From IMG/VR virus record IMGVR_UViG_3300037087_000760, positions 124,001 through 188,000 of that record: a stretch of DNA of 64,000 nucleotides, one strand, 5' to 3'. Position numbers and translations under genes: made by a program. Under the pieces are notes generated by a model that was not told the DNA's origin, made no database searches, and saw only the letters and a program-made list of their open reading frames with translations. Of the stretch, positions 19,066 to 51,120 are shown piece after piece (position 1 is the first letter of the stretch; each line of letters begins with the position of its first letter).

Positions 19066-19072
19066 AAATATC

Positions 19073-19786
19073 ATGAAAAAGATTTTAATTACTTCAGGTG
19101 GTACAAGAGAATATATTGATGAAGTTCGTGTACTCACCAATATATCATCTGGTAAATTGGGTTCATTAATAGCGGATCAATTTTCGATATTTAATGGTCC
19201 TTATTCCGTTTCTCATAAGTGTAATTTATATGAAGTACATTTCGTTTATGTGAAAGGTTCATTGAAACCATTTTTTGAGGGGGATGATGTTATATTACAT
19301 GAAGTAACTGATGTTAAATCCGTTTATGATATAATGGAAAAACTCGTTCCAGAAATGGATGTGGTTATTCATCCGATGGCCGTATCAGACTTTGGATTTA
19401 CCCCAATCAAAACAAAACTAAAAAGTAATGATCCAGAGGGTTTCATTCAAAGTATGAAAGAAAGAATTTATCAAACTCCAAAGATATTATCTCATATAAA
19501 AGAATGGAATCCCAATTGCTTTCTTATTTCTTTTAAATTTGAAAATGAATTAACAAGAGATGAATTACTTTTCTCCGCTGAAGAATCGATGAAGAAGAAT
19601 GGTTCTGATATTGTCATTGCTAATGATAAATCAGAAATGAAAAAATTGGGTGTTCACAAGGCTTATGTTATCAGGAAAGAACCAGTACCAACTTATGGTG
19701 TTTATGGAAGATTGGATTGTGAATTAAATGGAAAAGATGAAATAGCCAGAAAAATTTTTAAAATAGTAAACGAATTGAATGATTGA
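19073..19786 (+). CDS. coaB: Phosphopantothenate--cysteine ligase
   Basis: ITSGGTREYIDEVRVLTNISSGKLG, AVSDF, ISFKFE, IAND. Confidence 0.9.
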   Translation: MKKILITSGGTREYIDEVRVLTNISSGKLGSLIADQFSIFNGPYSVSHKCNLYEVHFVYVKGSLKPFFEGDDVILHEVTDVKSVYDIMEKLVPEMDVVIHPMAVSDFGFTPIKTKLKSNDPEGFIQSMKERIYQTPKILSHIKEWNPNCFLISFKFENELTRDELLFSAEESMKKNGSDIVIANDKSEMKKLGVHKAYVIRKEPVPTYGVYGRLDCELNGKDEIARKIFKIVNELND

Positions 19787-22078: not shown

Positions 22079-23851
22079 ATGAATAAGAACATTAAGATAT
22101 CCCTCAACCAGATTAATACCGTAACTGGTGATATCAAAGGAAATTACAGTAAAATATTGGATCTTACCCATAAGGCTATTTCTGATGGAGCGGACATCAT
22201 TGTATTTCCCGAAACATCGGTAACAGGATATTGTGTTGGTTCTCTGTGGGATAATGTAGATTTTATTTTTGAACAGGAAAATTGTATCAAAGATTTGATT
22301 AAAATTATTCCTCATGATAAAGCCCTTATCATTGGTTATATCAGTTATCATGGAGCTAAACCTGATGGTTTCCCATTACTTCGTAATAGTGTCGCTGTTA
22401 TCAATCAAAATAAATTACAGAGGTACGACAAACAACTTCTCGCCAACGCTGATCATCACGAGGATAGAAAATATTTTAAGCCGGGAAAGAAATCCAAAGT
22501 ATTTGAACTTCATTTAAAAGATGGTGAAACCTTAAAGGTAGGTGTTCCTATTTGTGAAGATGCTTGGTATATGAATCATTTCCGTAATATTCCAAAAGAA
22601 ATGATTAATTTGGGGGCCGAAATTTTGATTATTCCCAATCAATCTTATTTCTATTATGGTAAGGATTTACTCCGTGAAAAACTTTTCAGTACCATCGCTA
22701 ATGAGTATCATATTCCAGTTATCACCCTCAATTCTGTTGGAATTGGTGATATTGTAAAGAACATCATCATATATGATGGAAGTTCAATGGTATTCAACGA
22801 AAACGGTGAAAAACTAAGACATTTCAAGAAATTCGGGGAACAATCTGATATTATTGATTTATTTACCAGTAAATCTTCTTTATATCATAATGAATACTTC
22901 GAAAATTATACCACAAAACCAAAATTTGAAGAAATCATTGACGCTATCTGTTTTGAACAGAAAGAAATGTTTCGTCTGTTGGGTATAAAGAAGGCTCAGG
23001 TTCATCTTTCTGGTGGAATTGATAGTATCATAGTCGCGGTTCTTTGTATCCTCTCTATGGGGAAAGAAAACTGTGTTTTTATAACAAATCCGACTTCACT
23101 TAACACTAAAAGTCTGAAACTTGTTCATAAGATGGTTAAAACTCTTGGAGTTGACTTATACACCGATGAATTAGATGAAATTGTTAACGCTCTCAAAAAG
23201 GCTGATACCAAAGCATTCGGAGAAACCACATCCAAAATTCAGGGTGAAATTGAAACAGTGTTTCACGCCGTTGGTAGGACAGTTCAGGGATTAGCGGCCA
23301 CTCATCGTTTCGGTAGTGGTATAGTCGCCACAGGTAATCATACAGAAATCGTTCTTGGTTGGTGTAACTTTCATGACATTGGTTCAATTGGAGTACATTC
23401 AATCATTGGTGATTTAACCAAATTGGAACTCTATCAATTATCTCAGGTATTGAATGATAAATGTCGTGAGATGTACAATGGTGAGAATGTTATTCCTGAG
23501 GAATTGTTTAATGGAAAAGTTCTCCCCGCAGCTGATTTACCAGATAGTAAACTTGACCCATTTGATTATTACATTCAGTCTGGATTATGTGCCGCTTACA
23601 TTCGTGAAAGAAAATCCAGAAATCAGTTGATCGAAGATTTTAAAAATCACAGATTGAATCCTGATTTCTTTCCCTCAAATGTATATGAGAAATATACTAT
23701 GGAACAGTTTATCAAGGAAGTTGAAATCACAATGTCAAGAAGTAGAACTTCCGTATTCAAGGCCGCACAGCATGCACCTATTGTGATATTAAGTCCTCGT
23801 AGTAGGGGGTTCTCAAATCGTGAAACCATTTTGAACAAATATATATCATGA
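22079..23851 (+). CDS. nadE: Glutamine-dependent NAD+ synthetase
   Basis: Nitrilase domain (FPETSVTGY, YDK, ICEDAW) plus synthetase domain (LSGGIDS, TGNHTE, GDLTK). Confidence 0.92.
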   Translation: MNKNIKISLNQINTVTGDIKGNYSKILDLTHKAISDGADIIVFPETSVTGYCVGSLWDNVDFIFEQENCIKDLIKIIPHDKALIIGYISYHGAKPDGFPLLRNSVAVINQNKLQRYDKQLLANADHHEDRKYFKPGKKSKVFELHLKDGETLKVGVPICEDAWYMNHFRNIPKEMINLGAEILIIPNQSYFYYGKDLLREKLFSTIANEYHIPVITLNSVGIGDIVKNIIIYDGSSMVFNENGEKLRHFKKFGEQSDIIDLFTSKSSLYHNEYFENYTTKPKFEEIIDAICFEQKEMFRLLGIKKAQVHLSGGIDSIIVAVLCILSMGKENCVFITNPTSLNTKSLKLVHKMVKTLGVDLYTDELDEIVNALKKADTKAFGETTSKIQGEIETVFHAVGRTVQGLAATHRFGSGIVATGNHTEIVLGWCNFHDIGSIGVHSIIGDLTKLELYQLSQVLNDKCREMYNGENVIPEELFNGKVLPAADLPDSKLDPFDYYIQSGLCAAYIRERKSRNQLIEDFKNHRLNPDFFPSNVYEKYTMEQFIKEVEITMSRSRTSVFKAAQHAPIVILSPRSRGFSNRETILNKYIS

Positions 23852-24120: not shown

Positions 24121-24843
24121 ATGAACTTAGAATTTACAGAAATCGACAATGTGATAATTGTACCCGAATGTACAGCATCAATGAATGTAGATCCACAAAA
24201 AGGATTTACTCCATTATGTCCTGAAGAACTTCCTGTTCCAGAAGGTGACAAAATTGTCAATGAATTGAATGGTCAAAACTCTATCACTAAATATAAACTT
24301 GTGTCTAAGGATGTTCATCCTAAAAACGCAGCTTGGATCGCTACACCAGAGAATCCCCAATTATCAGTTGTCGGACTTCCTGATGTTGATGTTCGTTGGA
24401 ACAGACATTGTGAATCTGGTACTCGTGGAATGGAACTTCTTGATGGATTACCAAAAATGACAGAATACGACTTTTTTGTTGGTAAGGGTTTCGAACCGAA
24501 TCTTCATCCATATTCAGCTTGTTATCATGATGTGGCAAAAACAATATCTACTGGTGTCATTGAATGGTTGAATCAACATAATATTTTAACGGTTATTGTT
24601 GGTGGATTGGCACTTAATGTAGAAGAAACCCCTCTTTGCGTTGGTCATACAGTAATTGATCTCGCTGAGGCTGGTTTTCAGGTCGTTCTTAATTTAGGAG
24701 CTGTTCGTGGACTTGGAACAATTGAAGGTCAGGAAAAATTTATTGAAATGTTGAAAAATAAATATAATGTATTTGTTGTTAATTCTTATAAAGATATTAG
24801 CACCAATCTTACATTTGATTTACCATATACTGGAACAGTTTAA
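24121..24843 (+). CDS. pncA: Nicotinamidase
   Basis: VDPQKGF, ELPVPEGD, KDVH, WNRHC, GKG, YSAC, GGLA...CV. Confidence 0.88.
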   Translation: MNLEFTEIDNVIIVPECTASMNVDPQKGFTPLCPEELPVPEGDKIVNELNGQNSITKYKLVSKDVHPKNAAWIATPENPQLSVVGLPDVDVRWNRHCESGTRGMELLDGLPKMTEYDFFVGKGFEPNLHPYSACYHDVAKTISTGVIEWLNQHNILTVIVGGLALNVEETPLCVGHTVIDLAEAGFQVVLNLGAVRGLGTIEGQEKFIEMLKNKYNVFVVNSYKDISTNLTFDLPYTGTV

Positions 24844-26186: not shown

Positions 26187-26858
26187 ATGGACGAATTCAC
26201 AAAATATGCTACCCGACATATGGGTATTAACAGTTTAACACTGGATAAATATAAATCAATAGCCTCAAATTACATTTCACCAACTATTATTGAAGAAAGA
26301 CAACTCAATGTTGTTACGATGGATGTGTTTTCACGATTGATGATGGATAGAATTATTTTTTTGGGTGTTCCCATTGATGATTATGTTGCTAATATCATTC
26401 AAGCACAATTATTATTCTTAGAATCGGTTGATAGTGGTAAAGATATTCAAATTTATCTTAACAGTCCGGGTGGATCTGTTTACGCTGGACTTGGTATCTA
26501 CGATACAATGCAATATATCAACTCAGAGGTTGCTACTATTTGTACAGGTATGGCCGCCTCAATGGCCGCCATTCTTTTATGTGCCGGAACAAATGGTAAG
26601 AGAACTGCTTTACAACATTCTCGTATTTTGATCCATCAACCTATGGGAATGGCTGAAGGTCAAGCATCAGATATGGAGATCACAGTTAAAGAAATTAATA
26701 AACTCAAAAAAGAGTTATACGAAATCATAGCTTTACATTCTGGTCAGACTTTTAAAAAAGTGGAGAAAGATTCGGATCGTGATTATTGGATGACTTCAAT
26801 CGAAGCTAAGAATTATGGTATTATTGATGAAATCCTTGAGAAGAAAATAGTCGGATAA
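26187..26858 (+). CDS. clpP: ATP-dependent Clp protease proteolytic subunit
   Basis: DVFSRLMMDRIIFLG, NSPGG, AASM, IHQP, DRDYW; Bacteroidota-like N-terminus ISPTIIEERQLNV. Confidence 0.97.
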   Translation: MDEFTKYATRHMGINSLTLDKYKSIASNYISPTIIEERQLNVVTMDVFSRLMMDRIIFLGVPIDDYVANIIQAQLLFLESVDSGKDIQIYLNSPGGSVYAGLGIYDTMQYINSEVATICTGMAASMAAILLCAGTNGKRTALQHSRILIHQPMGMAEGQASDMEITVKEINKLKKELYEIIALHSGQTFKKVEKDSDRDYWMTSIEAKNYGIIDEILEKKIVG

Positions 26859-27844
26859 TTTTTTTATTCAATAATATTTCTTATATTTGAGGAAATAAGA
26901 AAATTATGAAGATAAGAATTCAAGTGATTGAAAATAGTAATGAGTCACTATCAATATCCTATACTTTACAGAAACTAACCTTAGTTGGTTGGGTTAATTT
27001 ACAATTATCTGATGTCTGGAAAGAAAAACTTCCCTATTTAGATGGAATTTCACCCATCCGATTCTTCGGAAAGGCCGGGAGTAGTTGTACTGATTCAGAA
27101 AAAGCTAAAACAGTCAAGACTTTTTTGAATAAATCCAAATATCTTGATGATTCTATGTACGAACTAATTTTTGGTTATAAACCTATACATAAGAAAGTTA
27201 GTTATCTCTATTAAGATGAAAAAAGAACCAATTCTTATTACAGAAGATGGTGTACCATACTATGATGAAAATAAGTTGGTCTGGGATACACATGATTTTT
27301 CCTCTGGTGATCCTGCTATAATAGTTAATCCTACATTTTTAGATCAAACACCTGTAAAATATGCTAAAAATATTGATCGAATGTTTTTTCATAGTAAGAA
27401 AAAAGCATTGGAATATATGAAAGATAACATAAGATTTTTAGCTTTGACTGACATTGATAAACTATCAAATGGTATTAATGAAGGAAATATAATTATCAAT
27501 AGAAAAGATTTAATAAAATTACTCAGAAAAAGAATAAACGATGAAAACTGTTAGTATACCAGCTAATGTTCATTTACCCAAGGTCGAAGTCGAAATCGAT
27601 CCACTTGATGTCTTAAAAGAATTAGAGGAAGAATTTTTAGATAAATATGGATGGATTGAAAAAAAAGGAAAGAAATATTTTTTAATGTATCCAGAACTCA
27701 GCTTTGATGAAAAGAGTTATCAAGTACGTCAAGTATCTACGAATGAAGTGAAATTTATTGATGCTATTCATACGATGCAAACTTTTTTACAAGAAAAAAA
27801 TAAGAAATCAAAATCAAAACCAAAATCTTAACAAAAAACTCACA

Positions 27845-29890
27845 ATGAAAAAACTCGCAATTATTTTTATGTCATTACTATTTGTAGTAATGGTTGGTTA
27901 TTCTCAGAAATTCAATCCTGATTCGGGATACAGATTAACAAAGGATACCTTACAATTAAATGAGGTTACTATCAGTTCCTTTCTTCCATACCAAGCAACA
28001 ACCTTGATGCCAATCACTTTTAAGAATTTATATAAAGCTGATTTGGGATTGAAAAATTATGGTCAAGAACCAAGTAGGATTTTAAATACCACTCCATCTA
28101 TAACCACTTATTCGGAATCAGGTGGTGATTGGGGTTATTCTTATATAAGATTAAGAGGTATTGATCAAACCAGAATAAACACCACTCTTAATGGTGTTCC
28201 AATGAATGAACCAGAGGATCAAGGATGTTATTTCTCAAATTATCCTGATTTTCTTCAGTCTGTTGATATGTTACAAATACAGAGAGGAACAGGAATGACT
28301 AAAAATGGGTCAGCCAGTTATGTTGGAAGTATGAATTTCGAATCATATAAACCATCTACATCAAGTGTAGGGGCCTTTTTCGGAGCTGGATCATTCGGAT
28401 CAACCAAAATTTCAATGAATACTGAACAAAATTGGAAAAAAGGTGGGTTATATGCTTCATTTTCTGACCTTGAAACAAAAGGTTATAAATATCATTCTGG
28501 TAATCATTCCAGAAGTGCTTTTCTTGTGGGAAATTATACAACTGGAAGAAATCAATTTAAATTTGTTGGTTTTGCTGGTGAACAAATGAACCAATTAGCT
28601 TGGTTGGGTGTTCCAATAGATAGTATCAATTTAGACCGTAGATATAACACTTGTACCACTCGTGAAAATGATCATTTTAATCAATATCATTTGCAATTTC
28701 ATCACACCTATATTATAGATAATAAATCCAGATTTAATTATTGTGTCTATTATAATTATTTGAATGGTTTCTATACTTATGATGGAATTCATAATGGAAC
28801 ATGGGATACTATATCATCTGGTAAATATAATTTATATGCATATCATCTTTATTCTAACTTCTTAGGTACTAATGTAAACTATTATATTAAACTTGGACCA
28901 TTGGATTTTTATACAGGGGTTAATGGTTCTAAGTATGATAGGGAACATCATGGAACAACAAATGATATCTATACTTACAAAAATACAGGATTCAGAGATG
29001 ATTTAAGTGGATTTGTTAAAGGTATTTTAAACGCTGGAAGTTTCAATTTTTATGGTGATGTTCAATATCGTTATACTACTTTTGTTTATAATGGTGATGT
29101 TTATCTACAACATTTTATTTGGAATTTTCTGAATTATAGTGTTGGTGTTGAATATAAAGCCAAACACAACATCCTTTATTATTCCATTGGTAAAACACAT
29201 CGAGAACCTATTCGTAATGATATGTTTGGTGGTTATGATAATCTATCGTCTGATCCTCTTGGAAAAGCTGTTTTTTATGATTTAAAACCAGAATCAGTAT
29301 TGGATCAGGAATTTGGCTATCGTTATATCATAGGAAATTTAAATTTGAACATCAATCTATATTATATGTTATTCAAAGATGAATTAGTATTAACGGGAGC
29401 TTACGGGCCAACAGGATTACCACTTCATGAAAATGTAGATAACAGTTTCAGGTCAGGATTTGAATTCGATTTTAAATACAGATGGAAATTTGGATTAACA
29501 TTACTTCAAAATGTATCCTATAATTATAGTAAAATAACATGGACAAATAAACAAACAACTCCTGTCTTAACACCAGAATGGCTATCAAATACTGAAGTAA
29601 ATTATAATTACAAATGGTTTATAATCGGTTTGAGTGGTAGGTATCAAAGTTGGTCTTATATTGATCAAAGAAACAACTTCACCATTCCAAGTTTTTATAC
29701 ACTGAATGCTATGATTGGATTAAAATGGTCATGGGGAGAATGGGATATTTATTTGAATAACATAACTGATCAAAAAACTTTATCGAGTGGTATGGTTTCT
29801 GGTGATGGGACTCCTTATAATCAATTTATTCCTCTGTATTATGTGAATGCACCATTTAATTTCTTTACTGGACTTAAATTTAAAATGTAA
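27845..29890 (+). CDS. TonB-dependent outer-membrane receptor (vitamin-uptake type)
   Basis: Signal peptide ending SQ; plug IRLRGIDQTRINTTLNGVPMNEPE, LQIQRG; aromatic beta-barrel ending GLKFKM. Confidence 0.9.
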   Translation: MKKLAIIFMSLLFVVMVGYSQKFNPDSGYRLTKDTLQLNEVTISSFLPYQATTLMPITFKNLYKADLGLKNYGQEPSRILNTTPSITTYSESGGDWGYSYIRLRGIDQTRINTTLNGVPMNEPEDQGCYFSNYPDFLQSVDMLQIQRGTGMTKNGSASYVGSMNFESYKPSTSSVGAFFGAGSFGSTKISMNTEQNWKKGGLYASFSDLETKGYKYHSGNHSRSAFLVGNYTTGRNQFKFVGFAGEQMNQLAWLGVPIDSINLDRRYNTCTTRENDHFNQYHLQFHHTYIIDNKSRFNYCVYYNYLNGFYTYDGIHNGTWDTISSGKYNLYAYHLYSNFLGTNVNYYIKLGPLDFYTGVNGSKYDREHHGTTNDIYTYKNTGFRDDLSGFVKGILNAGSFNFYGDVQYRYTTFVYNGDVYLQHFIWNFLNYSVGVEYKAKHNILYYSIGKTHREPIRNDMFGGYDNLSSDPLGKAVFYDLKPESVLDQEFGYRYIIGNLNLNINLYYMLFKDELVLTGAYGPTGLPLHENVDNSFRSGFEFDFKYRWKFGLTLLQNVSYNYSKITWTNKQTTPVLTPEWLSNTEVNYNYKWFIIGLSGRYQSWSYIDQRNNFTIPSFYTLNAMIGLKWSWGEWDIYLNNITDQKTLSSGMVSGDGTPYNQFIPLYYVNAPFNFFTGLKFKM

Positions 29891-32995: not shown

Positions 32996-33087
32996 GGGAG
33001 TGTAGCTGATTTGGTTTAGCGGCAGACCGTTAATCTGTGACTGAAAATATTGAAATAAAGTTGGTTCGACCCCATCCTCTCCCGCCA
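32996..33087 (+). tRNA. tRNA-Asn(GTT) with 21-nt AT-rich variable region
   Basis: GCAGA-CCGTTAA-TCTGT; G73 plus CCA encoded; C33. Confidence 0.7.
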
Positions 33088-33252: not shown

Positions 33253-33257
33253 CAAAT

Positions 33258-33333
33258 GGCGAGATAGCTCAGACGGTTTTAGAGCGTCGGATTCATAACC
33301 CGGAGGTCGAGGGTTCAACTCCCTCTCTCGCTA
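33258..33333 (+). tRNA. tRNA-Met(CAT), elongator type
   Basis: Canonical cloverleaf, loop TT-CAT-AA. Confidence 0.93.
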
Positions 33334-33341
33334 CCCAAAAT

Positions 33342-33418: not shown

Positions 33419-33504
33419 ATCAATGTGAACGGAATGGTTATCGTAGAGGTCTCATAAGCCTTTCAACTCGTTGAGTTGTGGTGGTTCGAATCCACTCATT
33501 GATA
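33419..33504 (+). tRNA. tRNA(CAT), Met or Ile2, with long variable arm
   Basis: GAGGT-CTCATAA-GCCTT; variable hairpin TCAAC/GTTGA. Confidence 0.75.
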
Positions 33505-33510
33505 CAAAAT

Positions 33511-37236: not shown

Positions 37237-38103
37237 TTAGATTCCTAATAAATGTTTTGCTAGTGAAACCTCTGGGATATGTTGAAAATAGTACATTACT
37301 CCGAATAAAGATAGAGCCAATGAAAAGAAGAAAAACAAAGCCCATCCAATTTGTTTGTGGGTCATACTTTGATAATTATGTAATTTTTTCCATTCGAACC
37401 AAATTTCGATAACTCCCAGAATCATAAGTAAAGCAAATAATCCTATTTTTAACCAGAAAAACAGAACAGTTGAAGCTAATAGTCCAAATGATAAAATTCC
37501 CAATCCCAACCAAGATTTTAATGAGAAACCAATTGATTTAAATATTCTTCCACCATCCAATGGACTTATTGGTAAAAGGTTGAATAAATTTACAAAGGCC
37601 ATCCATCCGGCTATCGCCGCGAATAATGGATTCAGAGTAATAAAATATACTATTCCAGTAATAATAGTTAGGGCAAATCCCCAAACTGGTCCCATTATAG
37701 CAACAACGAATTCCGTATTTCTTGATTTGAAATCATTCTCAATAACAGCGGCACCACCAATGAATGGTATAAAATAAATGCCCTTAACTTTTAATCCATG
37801 TCTTTTGGCAGCCCATATATGACCAGATTCATGAACAAATAAACAAACCATGATAGCTATGGCGAATGTCCAAGTAGTGAGAAATGCATAACTCACAACA
37901 CTTCCAACGGCCAAACCTATTTTTACCACCTTTGCCCCTTTTAATAATTTTGTTACAACTGGAATGGCTTTAGATCCAATTTTTCCAAGAGCCACAAAAA
38001 ATCCTACAAAGATATTTTTCTTCTTCGGTTTTTCTTCAATCTTTGGTTGATAATTATAAGATGCTTTTACAAAAATTTTTTCTGGTTTTTCTCCAATCAT
38101 CAT
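37237..38103 (-). CDS. Site-2 (M50) intramembrane metalloprotease
   Basis: HESGH, FIPFIGG, MGP, NLLPISPLDGGR. Confidence 0.92.
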   Translation of the reverse strand: MMIGEKPEKIFVKASYNYQPKIEEKPKKKNIFVGFFVALGKIGSKAIPVVTKLLKGAKVVKIGLAVGSVVSYAFLTTWTFAIAIMVCLFVHESGHIWAAKRHGLKVKGIYFIPFIGGAAVIENDFKSRNTEFVVAIMGPVWGFALTIITGIVYFITLNPLFAAIAGWMAFVNLFNLLPISPLDGGRIFKSIGFSLKSWLGLGILSFGLLASTVLFFWLKIGLFALLMILGVIEIWFEWKKLHNYQSMTHKQIGWALFFFFSLALSLFGVMYYFQHIPEVSLAKHLLGI

Positions 38104-38714
38104 AATGTAACTTTTTTGAGGTTATAAATTTTTATCCAGTTTATAAATCCATAAATTGCCGTTCCTGTAAAAATCAATGATTCTATAGCGACAAGGTATA
38201 TTCCACTAAATCCAAACAAAAAAACACAAACTATATCACTTATTATCCAGACTAACCAAGATTCAATGTATTTAAAGGATAGTAGGTTGACACCAAGGAT
38301 ACTGAGAACTGTTACTGTGATGTCTAAGAATAGGTTTGCTGACTGTTTTTCTACTGGAAGTATCTGTCGAACTATGAAATCAATAACAAAAATGGAAATT
38401 ATAGTAATTATACTCCAAATTAGACGCTGTTTATTCGTCAACCATCTTAATCCCTTACCTTCGTTTTTATCTGTTTTTCTCCAATAAAATATGGCAACAA
38501 TACAGATGTAAGTAAAGTAAATTTGTAGAATGGCATTAGCGTAAAGTGAATTATTCCAGAAAAGAAAGAAGAAACACACTTGACCGATAATACTACAAAT
38601 CCAATTCCACCAATTAGCTTTTGTGGCAAATATAACGGAAACAAAATTGAAAATCGATCCGATCAATTCCAAGTAAGTTAAATGATAACCATATATTGTT
38701 AAGGCTGTTTCCAT
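38100..38714 (-). CDS. pnuC: Nicotinamide riboside transporter PnuC
   Basis: Multi-pass membrane protein; LYANAILQ, KYIESWLVWIISD, YGFINW. Confidence 0.88.
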   Translation of the reverse strand: METALTIYGYHLTYLELIGSIFNFVSVIFATKANWWNWICSIIGQVCFFFLFWNNSLYANAILQIYFTYICIVAIFYWRKTDKNEGKGLRWLTNKQRLIWSIITIISIFVIDFIVRQILPVEKQSANLFLDITVTVLSILGVNLLSFKYIESWLVWIISDIVCVFLFGFSGIYLVAIESLIFTGTAIYGFINWIKIYNLKKVTL

Positions 38715-41818: not shown

Positions 41819-42808
41819 ATGACTAACAAAAAAGATAAAAAAATAGGACTTGTATTTGGAAAGTTCATGCCCCTTCATAATGGACACATGGCCTTGATTC
41901 GATTTGCACAATCTCAGTGTGATAAACTATATGTATTGTTATGTGAGGCTAATGATGAACCAATATGTGGAAAAATTCGATTAGGATGGTTATTGGACAC
42001 ATTCAAAGATGATTTGAACATAGAAGTGAGAATTACTGATGTTCAATTACCATTAGTTCCCTATTCATCTAAATTAATAGCTAAAATGTGGGCCAAATTT
42101 TTCAAGGAAGAATTTCCTGATGTGAATATTCTATTTACTTCGGAAAGATATGGTGATTTCACAGCAGAATTCATGGGTATAAAACATATACTTTTTGATA
42201 ATGACAGAGAAGAAGTTTTTGTATCAGCCACCAAGATTCGTAATCATCCACTCATTTATTGGGATTATATTCCCGACATTGTAAAACCGTACTTTGTTAA
42301 GAAAATTTGTATTTGTGGAACAGAATCAACGGGAAAAAGTATATTAACCGAAAAACTTGCTAAGAGATTTCATACTAACTTTGTTCCAGAATGGGGTAGA
42401 ACTTTATGTCCGTCTACAACTGAATGTACCATAGATATAATTAAACAAATCGGTAAATCCCACGCTACTGACATTCACAATAAAATACAATTCTCACATA
42501 AATTTTTATTTTCAGATACCGACCTGAATACAACAAAAATGTATTCCTATTTCTTATTCAATGAAATACCGAAATTTGATGATTGGATTGAACAAGAAAA
42601 TAAGTTCGATTTGTACATTTTTCTTGAAAACGATGCCCCTTTTATTCAGGATGGAACACGACTGACAAAAGAAAGAAGGGATGAACTACGAGATTACCAT
42701 TACGACTACCTTATATCTCAAGGATGTAAAGTTGAAATTGTAACTGGTAGTGATTGGGAAATCAGGTATGAAAAAGCTGTCAGAATAATTGAGGAAAATT
42801 TCGGATAA
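41819..42808 (+). CDS. nadR: NadR-type NMN adenylyltransferase / ribosylnicotinamide kinase
   Basis: GKFMPLHNGH, FTSERYG, VSATKIR, GTESTGKS, EWGR, DTD, QDGTR. Confidence 0.92.
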   Translation: MTNKKDKKIGLVFGKFMPLHNGHMALIRFAQSQCDKLYVLLCEANDEPICGKIRLGWLLDTFKDDLNIEVRITDVQLPLVPYSSKLIAKMWAKFFKEEFPDVNILFTSERYGDFTAEFMGIKHILFDNDREEVFVSATKIRNHPLIYWDYIPDIVKPYFVKKICICGTESTGKSILTEKLAKRFHTNFVPEWGRTLCPSTTECTIDIIKQIGKSHATDIHNKIQFSHKFLFSDTDLNTTKMYSYFLFNEIPKFDDWIEQENKFDLYIFLENDAPFIQDGTRLTKERRDELRDYHYDYLISQGCKVEIVTGSDWEIRYEKAVRIIEENFG

Positions 42809-42813
42809 GAATC

Positions 42814-43104
42814 ATGAGAAATTACAAATTAGAAAAATTACAAGCCGGAGAAAGTTTCGTTACCAGTGAAAAAGGTAATTCCATGTCACCAATTATTAAG
42901 TCGGGACAAAAACATAAACTTGTTCCCGCCACTTGGAGAGATGTAGATGTAGATGATATAGTCTATTGTAAAGTCAAAGGAAACTTCTACACTCACCTTG
43001 TAAAAGCAAAAAATGAAGATAAGGGTTGCTTAATAGGTAACAACAAAGGTGGAGTTAACGGATGGACTAAACAAGTCTATGGTAAGGTTGTAAAAATCCT
43101 TTAA
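42814..43104 (+). CDS. S24/S26 peptidase-like small protein
   Basis: KGNSMSPII.SG. Confidence 0.5.
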   Translation: MRNYKLEKLQAGESFVTSEKGNSMSPIIKSGQKHKLVPATWRDVDVDDIVYCKVKGNFYTHLVKAKNEDKGCLIGNNKGGVNGWTKQVYGKVVKIL

Positions 43105-44360
43105 ATATAAATATTCAGAATTTCATTCAGTTTAATTTTGGTTTCCTCATTCAGTGATTTCCCCTTATTTTCATTATACAGAATCATAAAGGAACTTACC
43201 ACTTTATTGAATTTGAAACTATCCGTATAACCAAATACAGTTTCCTTAAACTTTTCAATATCAACAGTTTCCTTACCAGTTCTTGACATCCATTCATCCC
43301 ATTTTTTGAAGAATCTGATGATACCATTGATGTTCTGGTCTGACCATTGACCACCATCGAAATAATGTCCGATGAACATCAGATAAAACCTCAGAACCTT
43401 TGGATCATAGTTATCTGGATTAACAATATTTCCTTTACTTTTGGCCATCTTGATTCCATTATTCAGAATCATTCCCTGATGCACCACTTTTTTAAAAGGT
43501 TCTTCCTCACTGATCATCCCAATATCATACAGGAACATATTAATAAAACGAGCATATATCAGGTGCATGCAAGCGTGTTCACTTCCCCCGATGTACAGAT
43601 CAACTTGTTTATATTTATCTTTACTACACAGTTCATTTTCGTTGTACGAATCACAATAACGGATAAAATAGAAACTACTATCTACGAAAGTATCCAGAGT
43701 ATCAGTCTCACCTTCAATTGGAATAGGACATCCCCAACTTCTTTGTCTACTGACACACCAATCATGTTGATTCTCCAGCCAATCTCTTTGAGAATTGATT
43801 GTTTTCTTTGGGTAATCAATCCAATCCAGATTTTTTATCAGTCGGTCTTTATATTCGGTGATTTTAAAATACCATTGTTCCATTTGACGAATTTCAATGG
43901 TCGTATTACATCTATCACATTTACCATCTTTGACCTGTTCACGAGCCAGAACAGTTCCACAACTTGGACACCAATTTACTTCACCCCAAGCTTTGTAAGC
44001 CAGTCCATGTTCTTTCAGTTTGATAAATATCCATTGTGTCCACTTCTGGTAAGATGGATCTGAAGTAATTACTTTTTCTTCAAAAGAAGTGTCCATTCTT
44101 TCCATCTGTTTACGGAAATTCTCAATGTTTTCATAGGTAACTTCTCTGGGATCTCTATTGACTGATTTGGCGTAATTTTCAGCTGGAAGTCCAAAGGAAT
44201 CATACCCAAACGGTTGAAAAACTTTAACTCCTTTATATCTTTGGTATCGACAATAACTGTCTACGATAGCGTAATTATAATAATGTCCGATGTGCAGTCC
44301 GTTTCCGCTCGGATAAGGAAACATGACAACCACCATTTTTTCATTTTTTATGTCGTTCAT
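43101..44360 (-). CDS. leuS: Minimal leucyl-tRNA synthetase (no CP1 editing domain, no C-terminal domain)
   Basis: MFPYPSG, HIGH, DSFGLPAEN, CPSC/CDRC, DWCVSRQRSWG, ETDTLDTF, GGSEHA, KMAKSKGN. Confidence 0.92.
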   Translation of the reverse strand: MNDIKNEKMVVVMFPYPSGNGLHIGHYYNYAIVDSYCRYQRYKGVKVFQPFGYDSFGLPAENYAKSVNRDPREVTYENIENFRKQMERMDTSFEEKVITSDPSYQKWTQWIFIKLKEHGLAYKAWGEVNWCPSCGTVLAREQVKDGKCDRCNTTIEIRQMEQWYFKITEYKDRLIKNLDWIDYPKKTINSQRDWLENQHDWCVSRQRSWGCPIPIEGETDTLDTFVDSSFYFIRYCDSYNENELCSKDKYKQVDLYIGGSEHACMHLIYARFINMFLYDIGMISEEEPFKKVVHQGMILNNGIKMAKSKGNIVNPDNYDPKVLRFYLMFIGHYFDGGQWSDQNINGIIRFFKKWDEWMSRTGKETVDIEKFKETVFGYTDSFKFNKVVSSFMILYNENKGKSLNEETKIKLNEILNIYI

Positions 44361-45120
44361 TGTCTTTTAATTTGTTTGAGAAATGTTCAATTGAGATATT
44401 ATGTTTTTTGATTGTTTTATAAATAAGACTTCTATTACTTTCGTTATATTCCATATTTAAATTTTTCATAATATCTCTATAAGATTTTGATTTAGAAATA
44501 ATCCCTTTAAAAAGATTAATATCATAATCGAAATAATCATAATTTCTTTTATTTGTGAAATCTTTCCAATCATCTTTTTCAATTATTTCCTTATCTTCGT
44601 ATCTAAAATAACACCCACCAGCCGTCCCTTTCAATTGACAACTAAATTTAATTTGTTGTCTAAAAATACCTGTTTCTCTTTCAGCTCCTCGAAGGCTAAT
44701 GAATTTTTTTAAAGGAGTAAAATTTTTATCATACATTATAATTGATTTCTTATTTGGATTGGATATTTTCATTAGTTTTTTACTTTTATCAGAATGTTTT
44801 TTTCCTGTCCAATCTACACCATCTCCACCATCTGTACTATTCTTCAATCTAAATCCCCAGCATTTAAATTGAGAAATCCAATATCTTTCTAATGAATCAA
44901 TATTATTTTTATCACCGATATCAAGTATTTCTATTATTGGTGAAAGATTTTTATTTTTGAGATATTTTAACCATTTATTTTTTCTTGTCCAAGGTTCTTG
45001 ACGGATACTCCAATTTGACATATGTCCCCTCAATCTTTTTTCTAAATTTTTGGTCTTACCTACATATTTTATAATTTTATCTTCTGGGTCTGTTAATGTA
45101 TAAATATAAAATTCCATCAT
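44341..45120 (-). mobile_element. Free-standing GIY-YIG homing endonuclease with NUMOD-type DNA-binding motifs
   Basis: YIYTL...YVGKT...R...H, LERYWI, NSTDGGDG, GKKHSDKSK, FISLRGAERETG. Confidence 0.88.
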
Positions 45121-45169
45121 AGATTTTTATTTCTATATATAAAAATTTATGTGTAATGTTTCATAGTTG

Positions 45170-45243
45170 TAACCCCACCCGGACTTGAACCGAGATATTT
45201 AGTTTCTAAAACTAACGCCGCTAACCAATTAGGCCATGGGGTC
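45170..45243 (-). tRNA. tRNA-Leu(TAG) with short variable loop
   Basis: TTAGT-TTTAGAA-ACTAA; 4-nt variable loop; A73. Confidence 0.8.
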
Positions 45244-45253
45244 ATTATTTTAG

Positions 45254-45327
45254 TAGTTCTGTTCGGACTTGAACCGAAATATTTGGTTTTTGAAACCAAC
45301 GCCGCTAACCAATTAGGCCACAGAACC
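45254..45327 (-). tRNA. tRNA-Leu(CAA) with short variable loop
   Basis: TTGGT-TTCAAAA-ACCAA; near-copy of the neighbouring D arm; A73. Confidence 0.8.
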
Positions 45328-45332
45328 TTTTG

Positions 45333-45417
45333 TATCGATGGTGGGACTCGAACCCACACCCTCGTAATGAGGAACGGCTTCTGAGGCCGTCGCGTCTACC
45401 AATTCCGCCACACCGAC
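45333..45417 (-). tRNA. tRNA-Leu(CAG), long arm
   Basis: Canonical Leu D arm GCG-GAATTGGTAGA-CGC; CT-CAG-AA. Confidence 0.94.
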
Positions 45418-45469
45418 AAATTTCAAATATTTACCAGTTTTTTGAAAAACTGTTCAAAATTTGATTTTG

Positions 45470-45543
45470 TAGCACCTGTCGGATTCGAACCGACAAACTT
45501 GGATTTTAAGACCAATATGGTTGCTCTATTACATCAAGGTGCC
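45470..45543 (-). tRNA. tRNA-Leu(TAA) with short variable loop
   Basis: TTGGT-CTTAAAA-TCCAA; A73. Confidence 0.75.
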
Positions 45544-45548
45544 ATTTG

Positions 45549-45632
45549 TAGCCTCTGTGGGAATCGAACCCACACGGTCTTTCGACCACTGGATTTTGAG
45601 TCCAGAGCGTCTACCAATTCCGCCAAGAGGCC
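45549..45632 (-). tRNA. tRNA-Leu(CAA), long arm
   Basis: Canonical cloverleaf, CT-CAA-AA. Confidence 0.95.
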
Positions 45633-45637
45633 ATTTG

Positions 45638-45722
45638 TGGGAGTTGATGGAGTTGCACCACCCGAGCCCTGAGGACAACAGATTTACAGTCTGCCCCGCT
45701 ACTACTTACGGAATAAACTCCC
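45638..45722 (-). tRNA. tRNA-Tyr(GTA), long arm
   Basis: GCAGA-CTGTAAA-TCTGT; atypical T loop TGCAACT. Confidence 0.88.
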
Positions 45723-45726
45723 AAAG

Positions 45727-45811
45727 TGACCAAGGTGGGATTCGAACCCACACGGGCGTAAAGCCCAACGGATTTTAAGTCCGTCGCGTCTACCAGTTCC
45801 GCCACAAGGCC
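45727..45811 (-). tRNA. tRNA-Leu(TAA), long arm
   Basis: CT-TAA-AA; two T-T mismatches in acceptor stem. Confidence 0.88.
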
Positions 45812-45819
45812 AATTTCAG

Positions 45820-45901
45820 TGTCCATAGGGGGACTCGAACCCCCACGCCTTTCGACAATAGTTTCTTAGGCTATCGCGTCTACCAGTTCCGCCATACGGA
45901 C
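45820..45901 (-). tRNA. tRNA-Leu(AAG), long arm
   Basis: ATAGC-CTAAGAA-ACTAT; canonical Leu D arm. Confidence 0.88.
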
Positions 45902-45918
45902 AATTTCAAAGAACTCAG

Positions 45919-45990
45919 TGGGAATAGAAGGATTCGAACCTACAAATCACGATTTTACAGACCGCTGAGCGACCACTGCTCAATATTCCC
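45919..45990 (-). tRNA. tRNA-Tyr(GTA) with short variable loop
   Basis: GGGAATA/TATTCCC+A; CT-GTA-AA; 5-nt variable loop. Confidence 0.85.
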
Positions 45991-50157: not shown

Positions 50158-51120
50158 TTATTTGATTTCTATTTTTATGTTTGGTATGAAAATATTTACT
50201 TTATCAAGATCATCTATTAAATCTTTCTTGTATAATTTAGGATACCAATTTGAATCATATTCGATACCAATTATATATTTATTAATACCTTTTATACAAT
50301 CAAAATTATTTGATGGATCATATTTCAAATTAAGTTCAGTATGAGAATTACATTCTACTCTTTCTTCAGCTTCGTGTTTAAAATATGGATCTTTATGATA
50401 TAAATGAGATCTAATTTTAAAATGATGGCTCATTCTATCACCATCGAATGTTATTTTAACTGGATGGTTATTATAATTTAGATTTTTATTTCTCGAAAAA
50501 GATATAAAATGAAATAAGGAAATCATTCTATCATCTTTTAAAATATTCTTCAAATTATCCAAAGTTGTCCAATGATATAAGAATCCAACCTGTTTTGACT
50601 CTTTTAATTCACAACCCCAATTATAATTTCTCTCCCTTTGATATTGTTTTATTATTTCAACTAAACTTGACCAAAAGACAACAGCTGTAGTTCCTACCCC
50701 TTCTTTAAATTTTATTGAATCGTATCCTTTCTTTTTAAGTTTGGGAACTATATGATATTCCCTATCCAATATTTCTAAAACTTTATATGGTGAAAAATAA
50801 TCATAACCATAGAATCTTTGTTTCCTCATAAGATCATTTAATTCTGTTTCGGGTATAGGTAACGATCTCAATAATTTTTCATAATTATCAATTCCTTGCT
50901 CTCCATAAGGTGTTAAATCCAATGTTTTTTCCAAGTGAAGTTTAACTACATAGATATATTTTCCATATCTTTTCGATTCCTTTTCCGTATCGGAGAAATA
51001 TATTCCCATTCTACTTTTTGTAGTATCTCGTCTGGTTTTAAATGATGTAATATCATCATTATAACTTCCATGATACCAAATTTCATTATCATTATTGAAT
51101 TTTTCAAAAGTGGTTAACAT
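50158..51120 (-). CDS. Tandem ART-fold (ART-PolyVal-like) protein
   Basis: MLTTFEKF; WYHGS...GIYFSD...YDSI; second domain LYHWT...ISFSR...EAEE. Confidence 0.55.
   Translation of the reverse strand: MLTTFEKFNNDNEIWYHGSYNDDITSFKTRRDTTKSRMGIYFSDTEKESKRYGKYIYVVKLHLEKTLDLTPYGEQGIDNYEKLLRSLPIPETELNDLMRKQRFYGYDYFSPYKVLEILDREYHIVPKLKKKGYDSIKFKEGVGTTAVVFWSSLVEIIKQYQRERNYNWGCELKESKQVGFLYHWTTLDNLKNILKDDRMISLFHFISFSRNKNLNYNNHPVKITFDGDRMSHHFKIRSHLYHKDPYFKHEAEERVECNSHTELNLKYDPSNNFDCIKGINKYIIGIEYDSNWYPKLYKKDLIDDLDKVNIFIPNIKIEIK

What the first reader, a model, noticed from the sequence alone, without database searches (positions are those of the whole stretch)
43101..44360. 419-aa minimal LeuRS with clean domain deletions
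HIGH, KMSKS-like and ZN1 motifs are intact. The CP1 editing domain is replaced by about 4 residues (QRDW-LENQ-HDWCVSRQR), CP2 and the leucine-specific insert are collapsed, and the C-terminal tRNA-elbow-binding domain is missing. Typical bacterial LeuRS is about twice this size. It lies on the same strand, downstream of the Leu tRNA cluster.
Basis: partly seen in the sequence, partly recalled or inferred. Interest (0 to 1): 0.8.

Follow-up and report, generated by a model that had tools for sequence, protein, structure and literature searches.

The report
Stripped-down leucyl-tRNA synthetase of huge phages
A giant bacteriophage from peat carries a half-size version of the enzyme that loads leucine onto tRNA: it has lost its proofreading domain and its tRNA-elbow grip, yet it is tightly conserved in hundreds of related phages, so it probably shows how little of this enzyme is needed to work.

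Summary
Window 43101-44360 (- strand) encodes a 419-aa bacterial-type LeuRS core. HIGH, KMAKS, the four ZN1 cysteines and the leucine-pocket motifs are intact. Missing are about 25 N-terminal residues, CP1 (4-residue scar LENQ), the ZN2 insert (about 55 aa), the leucine-specific domain (tetrapeptide NNGI) and the last ~110 aa (end of the anticodon-binding bundle plus the C-terminal elbow-binding domain).

It is neither a fragment nor a pseudogene:
- Over 120 clusters of 404-442 aa at 69-93% identity exist, on phage contigs up to 780 kb.
- dN/dS is at most ~0.1.
- The AF2 model is compact (pLDDT 93.5) and best matches the CP1-less Mycoplasma mobile LeuRS (TM 0.93).

No CP1 or C-terminal piece was found in the window, in 33 related loci, or in the 634-kb and 735-kb relatives.

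A second huge-phage LeuRS family of separate core origin lost CP1 and the C-terminal domain at the same point. Both sit beside tRNA-Leu clusters that include short type-I tRNA-Leu.

Most likely it is an editing-free LeuRS in a phage leucine-decoding module. Activity is unproven, because C-terminal-domain deletion kills E. coli and Thermus LeuRS. I rate it a new variant of a known kind.

The parts
43101..44360 (-). 419-aa minimal bacterial-type leucyl-tRNA synthetase (catalytic Rossmann core + ZN1 + KMSKS/stem-contact fold + four-helix remnant of the anticodon-binding domain)
   Evidence: ORF. PDB phmmer E 1.4e-83 to LeuRS. Pfam tRNA-synt_1 and tRNA-synt_1g. AF2 pLDDT 93.5, pTM 0.91. Foldseek best match 3ziu_A, TMq 0.93.
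44283..44294 (-). HIGH signature (H23-I-G-H26)
   Evidence: H23 and G25 are invariant in alignment A1
43908..43970 (-). ZN1 zinc knuckle, C131/C134/C148/C151
   Evidence: all four Cys are conserved in at least 90% of family members
43767..43778 (-). CP1 scar: the tetrapeptide L195-E-N-Q198 stands where a 190-240 aa editing domain sits in canonical LeuRS
43713..43718 (-). ZN2 scar (I215-E216): about 55 aa of the second zinc-binding insert are absent
   Evidence: The ZN2 HMM hits only the 735-kb phage's LeuRS (L003), E 1.2e-11.
43437..43463 (-). Tetrapeptide NNGI in place of the leucine-specific domain, followed by the KMSKS signature as K304-M-A-K-S308
   Evidence: the M. mobile equivalent is GKDG (PMC3643597)
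43104..43340 (-). Truncated anticodon-binding domain (residues 341-419, four helices). It ends where canonical LeuRS continues with the ..APxAPH..EELW helix and the ~60-aa C-terminal tRNA-elbow domain.
44341..45120 (-). Free-standing GIY-YIG homing-endonuclease-like ORF (259 aa) between the tRNA-Leu cluster and the LeuRS; it overlaps the LeuRS start by 20 nt
   Evidence: Pfam GIY-YIG E 6.6e-9. 67% identical to an ORF in the same slot in the 735-kb phage (L003 4216-4986).
45169..45901 (-). Seven tRNA-Leu genes that cover all six Leu codons. Four are type II (83-86 nt): AAG 45819-45901, UAA 45726-45811, CAA 45548-45632, CAG 45332-45417. Three are type I (75 nt, 4-5 nt variable loop, A73): UAA 45469-45543, CAA 45253-45327, UAG 45169-45243.
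   Evidence: ARAGORN; Rfam tRNA 50-59 bits each
45918..45990 (-). tRNA-Tyr(GUA), 73 nt, type I

Best explanation
The gene encodes a working, editing-free leucyl-tRNA synthetase of a huge phage, probably one that infects Bacteroidota, cut down to the synthetic core.

Shown:
- It is a bacterial-type LeuRS homologue with intact ATP signatures, leucine pocket and ZN1.
- It folds (in prediction) as a compact core like the CP1-less M. mobile LeuRS.
- It is under strong purifying selection across hundreds of phage genomes.
- The missing domains are not supplied from any sequence that could be searched.

Inferred:
- It activates leucine to Leu-AMP and transfers it to the 3' end of tRNA-Leu, gripping mainly the acceptor arm and inner elbow through the catalytic domain, ZN1, the KMSKS/stem-contact fold and the four-helix remnant.
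- It does not use the elbow clamp of the C-terminal domain and has no post-transfer proofreading.
- Together with the adjacent phage tRNA-Leu set (all six codons, type I and type II), it forms a phage-encoded leucine-decoding module. This module would keep Leu-tRNA supplied for the AT-rich, TTA-rich phage genes during infection.
- Some mischarging is tolerated over a short infection.
For: Identity as LeuRS:
- PDB E 1.4e-83 against about 1e-21 for Val/Ile/MetRS.
- leuS_bact 381 bits against 160 for ValRS.
- The substrate-pocket motifs MFPYPSG, G(Y/W)D(S/A)FGLP, DTFVDSSFY and GGxEHAxxHL align one-to-one with T. thermophilus LeuRS. Their key residues are invariant across 48 LeuRS sequences.

Fold: AF2 pLDDT 93.5, pTM 0.91. 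Best PDB match is M. mobile LeuRS 3ziu, TMq 0.93.

Selection:
- More than 120 clusters of 404-442 aa at 69-93% identity, on contigs up to 780 kb.
- 33 IMG/VR loci.
- dN 0.19-0.38 with saturated dS, so dN/dS is at most ~0.1.

Not a split enzyme.

Losses that are known to be tolerated:
- M. mobile LeuRS lacks CP1 and the leucine-specific domain.
- Its linkers support charging when moved into E. coli LeuRS (PMC3643597).

Link to tRNA-Leu:
- tRNA-Leu clusters lie within 6 kb upstream in the window, L007, L011, L023 and L027/28.
- The same holds for the independent family in the 735-kb phage.

Independent repeat of the same architecture: a second phage LeuRS family, with a core of separate origin, lost CP1 and stops at the same helix.

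Other support:
- Ten family-specific conserved Lys/Arg on ZN1, the following helix and the anticodon-binding-domain remnant could make up for lost tRNA contacts.
- TTA is the commonest Leu codon in window ORFs.
Against: - Deleting the C-terminal domain of T. thermophilus and E. coli LeuRS abolished aminoacylation, and the domain is crucial in M. tuberculosis LeuRS (PMC3561953). A LeuRS without it is therefore not expected to charge canonical tRNA-Leu.
- The bridge between the synthetic and editing domains is reported to be crucial for synthetic activity (PMC4138327); here it is reduced to 4 residues.
- No transcript evidence: no listed RNA run holds the gene, and laid contigs matched only conserved tRNA segments from other organisms.
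- tRNA-Leu adjacency holds for only 7 of 33 family loci (6 of the 32 scanned, plus the window's own contig L004) and partly reflects shared ancestry.
- The protein falls below the NCBIfam equivalog cut-off (381 < 548 bits).
- No biochemical data exist for any member, as far as the paper searches show.
Confidence: 0.58

Rival explanations
1. It is a LeuRS-derived enzyme that no longer charges tRNA for translation. It would make leucyl-adenylate, and perhaps bind tRNA-Leu, for another purpose: regulation, leucine sensing, transfer of leucine to another acceptor, or a decoy or immunity copy against a LeuRS-targeting toxin or host shut-off.
For: - C-terminal-domain deletion abolishes aminoacylation in E. 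coli and Thermus LeuRS (PMC3561953).
- Natural LeuRS paralogues exist that bind tRNA and form Leu-AMP but do not aminoacylate, or do so poorly: Sulfolobaceae LeuRS-I and haloarchaeal LeuRS2 (PMC9437257).
- A self-immunity LeuRS (agnB2) appears among the structural matches (5ah5).
- The protein is below the equivalog cut-off.
Against: - ZN1, the KMSKS/stem-contact fold and the SRQRxWG motif are kept and conserved although ZN2, CP1 and the C-terminal domain went.
- The gene repeatedly sits beside tRNA-Leu gene clusters in two independent families.
- The genomes are full of other translation genes.
- No neighbouring gene suggests an alternative acceptor.
Confidence: 0.22
2. It is one subunit of a multi-part LeuRS. 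A tRNA-binding module, an editing module or both would be supplied in trans by another phage or host protein that is too diverged or too unrelated to be recognised as LeuRS C-terminal domain or CP1.
For: - Aquifex LeuRS is naturally split into two subunits (PMC3643597).
- Only 64 kb of this genome and 12-kb flanks of relatives could be read in full.
- Huge phages have many unannotated ORFs.
Against: - CP1, C-terminal-domain and N-terminal-lead HMMs, with strong positive controls, find nothing at E < 0.3 in the window or 35 loci.
- tBLASTn finds no CP1 or C-terminal domain in the 634-kb and 735-kb genomes, apart from a ValRS/IleRS-like CP1 hit.
- No gene is conserved next to the LeuRS across loci.
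Confidence: 0.12
3. It is a decaying remnant, an assembly artefact, or a gene fragment cut by the neighbouring homing endonuclease.
For: - A GIY-YIG endonuclease gene abuts the 5' end.
- One relative (L034) has a broken LeuRS next to a homologous endonuclease.
Against: - The same start, the same end and the same internal junctions recur in more than 120 independent clusters and 33 loci.
- dN/dS is at most ~0.1.
- The fold prediction is confident and compact.
- The N-terminus matches those of the other family members.
Confidence: 0.02

Closest known systems
Mycoplasma mobile LeuRS (PDB 3ZIU; 637 aa), the 'exceptionally small' natural LeuRS
   Same: - Bacterial-type LeuRS.
- CP1 is replaced by a short linker (9 aa there, 4 aa here).
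- The leucine-specific domain is replaced by a tetrapeptide (GKDG there, NNGI here) (PMC3643597).
- It is the best structural match to the model, TMq 0.93.
- The expected consequence is loss of post-transfer editing.
   Different: - M. mobile LeuRS is about 220 aa longer. By length and alignment extent it keeps what is missing here: the N-terminal lead, the ZN2-region insert, the full anticodon-binding domain and the C-terminal tRNA-elbow domain.
- It is the sole LeuRS of a cell. The phage protein is an accessory copy in a virus whose host has its own LeuRS.
aaRS genes of huge phages (Al-Shayeb et al. 2020, PMC7162821)
   Same: - The nearest GenBank relatives are the 634-kb and 735-kb phages of that study.
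- That paper reports up to 15 tRNA synthetases and up to 67 tRNAs per genome, and proposes that phages charge their own tRNA variants.
   Different: The main text says nothing about domain-reduced LeuRS, loss of editing or C-terminal domains, or type-I tRNA-Leu. Its supplements were not read.
Engineered truncations: E. coli / T. thermophilus LeuRS lacking the C-terminal domain, CP1-deleted E. coli LeuRS, LeuAC urzyme
   Same: The same domains are removed as here. CP1 removal leaves charging intact when the M. mobile linker is used (PMC3643597). Urzymes show that the bare class-I core can activate leucine and acylate minihelices (PMC11229368).
   Different: Laboratory deletion of the C-terminal domain abolishes aminoacylation (PMC3561953). 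The natural phage protein has been selected over long times and carries family-specific substitutions. Urzymes are far smaller (about 130 aa) and weak.
[quoted passage not shown]
   Same: Short-variable-loop and long-variable-arm tRNA-Leu coexist in one compartment, with evidence that LeuRS and tRNA-Leu co-evolve.
   Different: There, a full-length LeuRS uses its leucine-specific domain to accept the type-I tRNA. The phage enzyme has neither a leucine-specific domain nor a C-terminal domain.

Membership tests
Bacterial-type leucyl-tRNA synthetase (class Ia; NCBIfam TIGR00396 leuS_bact) | Class I signatures HIGH and KMSKS in a Rossmann-fold catalytic domain | tested here: met
   H23-I-G-H26 and K304-M-A-K-S308; most family members have KMSKS; Rossmann core modelled at pLDDT >90
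Bacterial-type leucyl-tRNA synthetase (class Ia; NCBIfam TIGR00396 leuS_bact) | Closer to LeuRS than to IleRS, ValRS or MetRS, with conserved leucine-pocket motifs | tested here: met
   PDB E 1.4e-83 for LeuRS against about 1e-21 for the others. leuS_bact 381 bits against 160 for ValRS. Pocket motifs align with T. thermophilus LeuRS.
Bacterial-type leucyl-tRNA synthetase (class Ia; NCBIfam TIGR00396 leuS_bact) | Score at or above the curated equivalog cut-off (548.4 bits) | tested here: not met
   381.4 bits; the shortfall comes from the missing domains
Bacterial-type leucyl-tRNA synthetase (class Ia; NCBIfam TIGR00396 leuS_bact) | CP1 editing domain (Pfam PF13603) | tested here: not met
   Replaced by LENQ. 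Rare relatives P0064 and P0122 keep a 125-129 aa mini-CP1.
Bacterial-type leucyl-tRNA synthetase (class Ia; NCBIfam TIGR00396 leuS_bact) | Complete anticodon-binding domain plus the C-terminal tRNA-elbow-binding domain | tested here: not met
   The protein ends about 110 aa early. The C-terminal-domain HMM finds nothing in the window or loci.
Bacterial-type leucyl-tRNA synthetase (class Ia; NCBIfam TIGR00396 leuS_bact) | Leucylation of tRNA-Leu | not testable with these tools
   Needs enzyme assays
Naturally CP1-less LeuRS of the Mycoplasma mobile kind | CP1 replaced by a short peptide and the leucine-specific domain by a tetrapeptide | tested here: met
   4-aa and 4-aa linkers, compared with the nonapeptide and GKDG of M. 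mobile LeuRS (PMC3643597)
Naturally CP1-less LeuRS of the Mycoplasma mobile kind | Otherwise complete LeuRS (about 570-650 aa, with the ZN2 region, full anticodon-binding domain and C-terminal domain) | tested here: not met
   419 aa. The 570-650 aa CP1-less proteins P0125, P0130, P0146 and others keep these parts and branch elsewhere in the tree.
Split (two-subunit) LeuRS of the Aquifex kind | A second gene that encodes the remaining LeuRS parts | tested here: not met
   None in the window, in 35 loci, or in the 634-kb and 735-kb phage genomes. The rest of this phage's own genome could not be read.

The most novel reading that the evidence does not exclude
The minimal LeuRS and the phage's unusual tRNAs form a private, co-evolved leucine-decoding pair. 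Having shed the elbow-binding C-terminal domain (and ZN2 and the leucine-specific domain), the enzyme would recognise tRNA by the acceptor arm alone. That would let it charge the phage's type-I (short variable loop) tRNA-Leu, which the host LeuRS may handle poorly. The phage would then keep translating when host LeuRS or host tRNA-Leu is shut off or attacked by defence nucleases. Two phage LeuRS families of separate core origin show the same architecture, both sit next to type-I tRNA-Leu, and they share a 125-aa mini editing module and a homing endonuclease. Under this reading the locus is an exchangeable 'leucine cassette' among huge phages.
Probability: 0.2. Interest if true: 0.8.

Novelty: new variant of a known kind. 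Interest (0 to 1): 0.62.

Why it matters
LeuRS is a textbook multi-domain synthetase. Laboratory removal of its C-terminal domain kills charging, and removal of CP1 abolishes proofreading. A natural 419-aa form conserved under strong selection in hundreds of huge phages would define the smallest LeuRS architecture that evolution has kept. The same architecture was reached a second time by an unrelated phage LeuRS lineage.

It offers three things:
- A direct test of how much tRNA recognition can rest on the acceptor arm.
- A natural intermediate between full enzymes and designed urzymes.
- A compact, editing-free scaffold that may be orthogonal, if it prefers the phage's type-I tRNA-Leu.

It also bears on how huge phages take over translation and how much mistranslation they tolerate.

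Tried and rejected
1. Split enzyme. tblastn with S. aureus LeuRS against the window found only the known gene. HMMs for CP1, the C-terminal domain, the N-terminal lead and ZN2 against six-frame translations of the window and 35 loci found nothing. The one exception was ZN2 inside the 735-kb phage's own LeuRS. Positive controls were strong. tblastn of CP1 and C-terminal-domain queries, from S. aureus and from the closest relatives P0064 and P0127, against all GenBank phages gave no hit in LR745206 or LR756501. The only exceptions were a weak ValRS/IleRS-like CP1 at LR745206 382677-383000 and short matches inside the phages' own LeuRS genes (LR756501/LR756503 192798-192920, E 0.8; LR745206 405416-405460).

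2. Conserved partner gene. Clustering ORFs from 35 loci shows no gene other than the LeuRS shared by more than 9 loci.

3. Read-through of the stop. No piece resembling the C-terminal domain follows the stop in any frame. A convergent 96-aa ORF occupies that space.

4. Expression. No listed RNA run holds the gene. Metatranscriptome contigs from the same peat study matched only 34-40 nt conserved tRNA segments from other organisms. This is uninformative.

5. Promoter and terminator scan: counts at chance level.

6. Cluster names and accessions: only 'leucyl-tRNA synthetase' from JGI.

7. Single origin of the two phage families. Monophyly was rejected by an AU test (p 1.3e-4), and again by a better-sampled tree. 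The shared mini-CP1 shows that the history is not simply tree-like.

8. Literature. No paper describing a domain-reduced phage LeuRS was found.
Full report
**1. What is there**

Window 43101-44360 (- strand) is an intact 419-aa ORF.
- It carries Pfam tRNA-synt_1 and tRNA-synt_1g.
- It matches solved LeuRS structures far better than any other synthetase: T. thermophilus LeuRS at E 1.4e-83, against about 1e-21 for ValRS, IleRS and MetRS.
- NCBIfam's bacterial leuS model is the top hit by a wide margin (381 bits; next is ValRS at 160). It still lies below the curated equivalog cut-off of 548 bits, because half of the model is unmatched.

**2. Anatomy**

I used the HMMER alignment to T. thermophilus LeuRS, BLASTP to S. 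aureus LeuRS and a 48-sequence alignment, A1.

Retained:
- the first Rossmann half with HIGH (H23-I-G-H26);
- ZN1 with four cysteines (C131, C134, C148, C151);
- the SRQRxWG motif;
- the second Rossmann half with the DTFVDSS and GGxEHAxxHL motifs;
- KMSKS, here as KMAKS at 304-308;
- four helices of the anticodon-binding domain (341-419).

Missing:
- about 25 N-terminal residues of canonical LeuRS;
- the CP1 editing domain: Tth 228-417 is replaced by L195-E-N-Q198;
- a ~55-aa ZN2-bearing insert (Tth 437-486) between PIPI and ETDTLDTF;
- the leucine-specific domain, here the tetrapeptide NNGI;
- the last ~110 residues, which are the closing helices of the anticodon-binding domain plus the C-terminal tRNA-elbow domain.

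A short leucine-specific domain is also normal for S. aureus, B. subtilis and M. mobile LeuRS (PMC3643597), so that point of the finding is not unusual. The other losses are.

The AlphaFold2 model is compact and confident (mean pLDDT 93.5, pTM 0.91). Its best PDB match is the naturally CP1-less M. mobile LeuRS (3ziu, TM 0.93 normalised to the query).

**3. Source and surroundings**

- The window is 100% identical to a 211-kb IMG/VR contig (L004).
- The DNA occurs in many peat metagenomes.
- The closest GenBank relative of the protein is in the 634.8-kb uncultured huge phage LR745206 (76% identity in one piece). A 38% relative is in the 735-kb phage LR756501. Both belong to the huge-phage study PMC7162821.
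- Window context fits a huge phage. It holds two tRNA arrays (21 tRNAs), an NAD salvage and synthesis island, ClpP, a TonB-dependent receptor and an ADP-ribosyltransferase.
- Short contigs carrying the same LeuRS are binned into Bacteroidota and Flavobacterium MAGs. One of them is the same contig as an IMG/VR viral contig. This points to a Bacteroidota host or to mis-binning.

**4. Real and selected**

- The word-indexed search returned more than 120 clusters of 404-442 aa at 69-93% identity, on contigs up to 780 kb.
- 33 IMG/VR loci carry it.
- At 50% clustering the family collapses to one representative, P0121 of 429 aa. It is the shortest complete LeuRS-like protein among the best 150 hits.
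- Starts, ends and internal junctions coincide across members.
- Against the window, dN is 0.19-0.38 with dS saturated, so dN/dS is at most ~0.1.
- It is therefore not a fragment, a pseudogene or an assembly artefact.

**5. Not a split enzyme, as far as can be tested**

- tblastn with a full-length LeuRS found only the known gene in the window.
- HMMs built from the CP1, C-terminal-domain, N-terminal-lead and ZN2 columns of A1 detect their targets in S. aureus LeuRS (E 3e-56, 5e-33 and 5e-19 for CP1, C-terminal domain and ZN2; the short N-terminal-lead HMM returned no control hit).
- The same HMMs find nothing below E 0.3 in six-frame translations of the window and 35 loci. The one exception is ZN2 inside the 735-kb phage's own LeuRS.
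- tblastn of CP1 and C-terminal-domain queries, both distant (S. aureus) and close (P0064, P0127), against all GenBank phages gave no hit in LR745206 or LR756501. The only exceptions were a weak ValRS/IleRS-type CP1 match 22 kb away from the LeuRS in LR745206 and short matches inside the phages' own LeuRS genes (LR756501/LR756503 192798-192920, E 0.8; LR745206 405416-405460).
- No gene is conserved beside the LeuRS across loci.
- The remainder of this phage's own genome could not be searched.

**6. Evolution**

Fam1, the window's family:
- It is a well-supported clade (SH-aLRT 100) among full-length bacterial LeuRS.
- Two members, P0122 (its deepest branch) and P0064 (nested inside it), keep a 125-129 aa 'mini-CP1'. 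It has the T-rich TTKPxT motif and the GTGxVMGVPxDDxRD motif.
- P0064 lies on a phage-like contig, next to a terminase and a SerRS.

Fam2, the family of the 735-kb phage:
- It has about 45 clusters of 508-547 aa, on contigs up to 549 kb.
- It keeps the N-terminal lead and ZN2 but has no ZN1 cysteines.
- CP1 is replaced by about 13 residues.
- It ends at the same anticodon-binding-domain helix as fam1, so it too has no C-terminal domain.

Relationship between the two:
- In the tree, fam2 is sister to Campylobacterota-type full-length LeuRS (SH-aLRT 96), far from fam1.
- An AU test rejects their monophyly (p 1.3e-4; quick trees, composition warnings).
- So loss of CP1 and of the C-terminal domain at the same point seems to have happened in two separately acquired phage LeuRS genes.
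- Yet the mini-CP1 of fam2 member P0322 is 58-61% identical to those of fam1, against 23-31% to canonical CP1. The cores are only about 38% identical.
- This small editing module has therefore been exchanged between the families, or is unusually conserved.
- CP1-less but otherwise complete LeuRS of 570-650 aa are also scattered through the tree.

**7. Link to tRNA-Leu**

- Directly upstream on the same strand lie seven tRNA-Leu genes that cover all six Leu codons, plus a tRNA-Tyr.
- Three of the Leu tRNAs (UAA, CAA, UAG) are 75 nt with a 4-5 nt variable loop. They are type I rather than the long-arm type II of bacteria. They have A73 and score 52-59 bits with the Rfam tRNA model.
- tRNA-Leu clusters also precede the LeuRS in L007, L011, L023 and L027/28, which with the window's own contig (L004) makes 7 of 33 fam1 loci (6 of the 32 scanned). 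The same holds in the fam2 locus L003.
- Type-I tRNA-Leu recur in L003, L007 and L027/28, with compensatory changes in their stems.
- A 259-aa GIY-YIG endonuclease ORF separates the tRNA cluster from the LeuRS. Its 67%-identical homologue occupies the same slot in L003.

**8. Mechanism**

Shown: an intact LeuRS synthetic site in a compact fold, strong selection, no detectable partner, and recurrent placement beside tRNA-Leu genes.

Inferred:
- The protein activates leucine and charges tRNA-Leu without proofreading.
- It relies on the catalytic domain, ZN1, the KMSKS/stem-contact fold and the helix remnant.
- Ten family-specific conserved Lys/Arg (K65, R140, K144, K171, K176, K249, K251, K386, K401, K408) are candidates for compensating tRNA contacts.

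Precedents: M. mobile LeuRS works without CP1 and the leucine-specific domain (PMC3643597), and class-I urzymes acylate minihelices (PMC11229368).

The main objection is experimental. Deleting the C-terminal domain of E. coli or T. thermophilus LeuRS abolishes aminoacylation (PMC3561953). A non-charging, Leu-AMP-forming role therefore remains a serious rival; natural paralogues of that kind are described in PMC9437257. I put about 0.58 on a charging, editing-free LeuRS, about 0.22 on a non-translational derivative, about 0.12 on a hidden trans partner and about 0.02 on decay or artefact.

**9. Novelty**

- aaRS genes in huge phages are known (PMC7162821), and so is a CP1-less LeuRS (M. mobile).
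- Full-text searches found no description of a LeuRS that also lacks ZN2, the end of the anticodon-binding domain and the C-terminal domain. They found none of its conservation in huge phages, of the second convergent family, of the shared mini-CP1, or of the neighbouring type-I tRNA-Leu.
- I rate it a new variant of a known kind, of clear interest to the aaRS and phage-translation fields.

**10. Dead ends**

- RNA evidence.
- Promoter scan.
- Cluster names.

Noticed in passing
window 45169-45243, 45253-45327, 45469-45543 (- strand); also L003 4009-4161, L007 4800-4873, L027 3949-4654: These are type-I tRNA-Leu: 74-75 nt with a 4-5 nt variable loop, A73 in 8 of 9 (the L007 one has U), and anticodons UAG, CAA or UAA. 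They sit beside normal long-arm tRNA-Leu. They recur in distant huge phages next to both reduced LeuRS families and score 52-59 bits with the Rfam tRNA model.
   Followed up: partly
window 45918-45990 (-): tRNA-Tyr(GUA) is 73 nt and type I, although bacterial tRNA-Tyr normally has a long variable arm.
   Followed up: no
window 33419-33505 (+), 32996-33087 (+), 33257-33337 (+); L007 3055-5615: Some tRNAs have unexpected bodies. One tRNA(CAU) is 87 nt with a 5-bp long variable arm and A73 (Rfam 47 bits). One tRNA-Asn(GUU) is 92 nt with a long A-rich variable region (40 bits). One tRNA(CAU) is 81 nt with an 8-bp acceptor stem. L007 has type-II-length Met, Ile, Thr and Asn tRNAs. Bacterial LeuRS ignores the anticodon, so long-arm tRNAs with non-Leu anticodons recall the nematode nev-tRNAs that are charged with leucine (PMC3333845).
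   Followed up: partly
window 44341-45120 (-); L003 4216-4986; L034 7295-8029: A free-standing GIY-YIG endonuclease sits in the same slot (tRNA-Leu cluster | endonuclease | LeuRS) in the window and in the 735-kb phage. The two copies are 67% identical, although the flanking LeuRS genes are only 38% identical. In L034 a 51% homologue sits right after a LeuRS whose ORF appears broken. This suggests a homing element that targets this locus.
   Followed up: partly
P0064 residues 193-317, P0122 199-327, P0322 223-349 (L062 8001-9548 encodes P0064): A miniature CP1 editing module of 125-129 aa keeps the TTKPxT and GTGxVMGVPxDDxRD motifs. It is 58-64% identical between the two phage LeuRS families, whose cores are about 38% identical. 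It is sporadic and nested in otherwise CP1-less clades, so it has been exchanged or repeatedly lost.
   Followed up: partly
window 11396-12616, 22079-23851, 24121-24843, 38100-38714, 41819-42808: This is an NAD+ salvage and synthesis island: NAPRTase, glutamine-dependent NAD synthase, an isochorismatase-family (nicotinamidase-like) protein, the PnuC NMN transporter and a NadR-like NMN adenylyltransferase/kinase. It may serve to restore NAD+ during infection.
   Followed up: no
window 27758-29890 (+), 26187-26858 (+), 50158-51120 (-), 17995-19786 (+): Other cell-like genes are present: a TonB-dependent receptor (plug + barrel), ClpP protease, an ART-PolyVal ADP-ribosyltransferase, and CoaBC split into separate flavoprotein and DFP ORFs.
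   Followed up: no
L064 375-2255 and 4707-6125; L063 413-2122: CP1-less but otherwise complete LeuRS of 569-626 aa occur on other metagenomic contigs. One of these contigs also carries a second 472-aa class-I synthetase-like gene 2.4 kb downstream. Reduced class-Ia synthetases may be more common than is recognised.
   Followed up: no
LR745206.1 382677-383000: A weak ValRS/IleRS-type CP1 match lies 22 kb from the minimal LeuRS in the 634-kb phage. That phage therefore probably encodes another class-Ia synthetase that still has an editing domain.
   Followed up: no
window 42814-43104 (+): A 96-aa ORF convergent with the LeuRS overlaps its stop by 4 nt. It has a GNSMSP motif reminiscent of S24/LexA-type peptidase domains but no Pfam, PHROG or NCBIfam hit.
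   Followed up: partly
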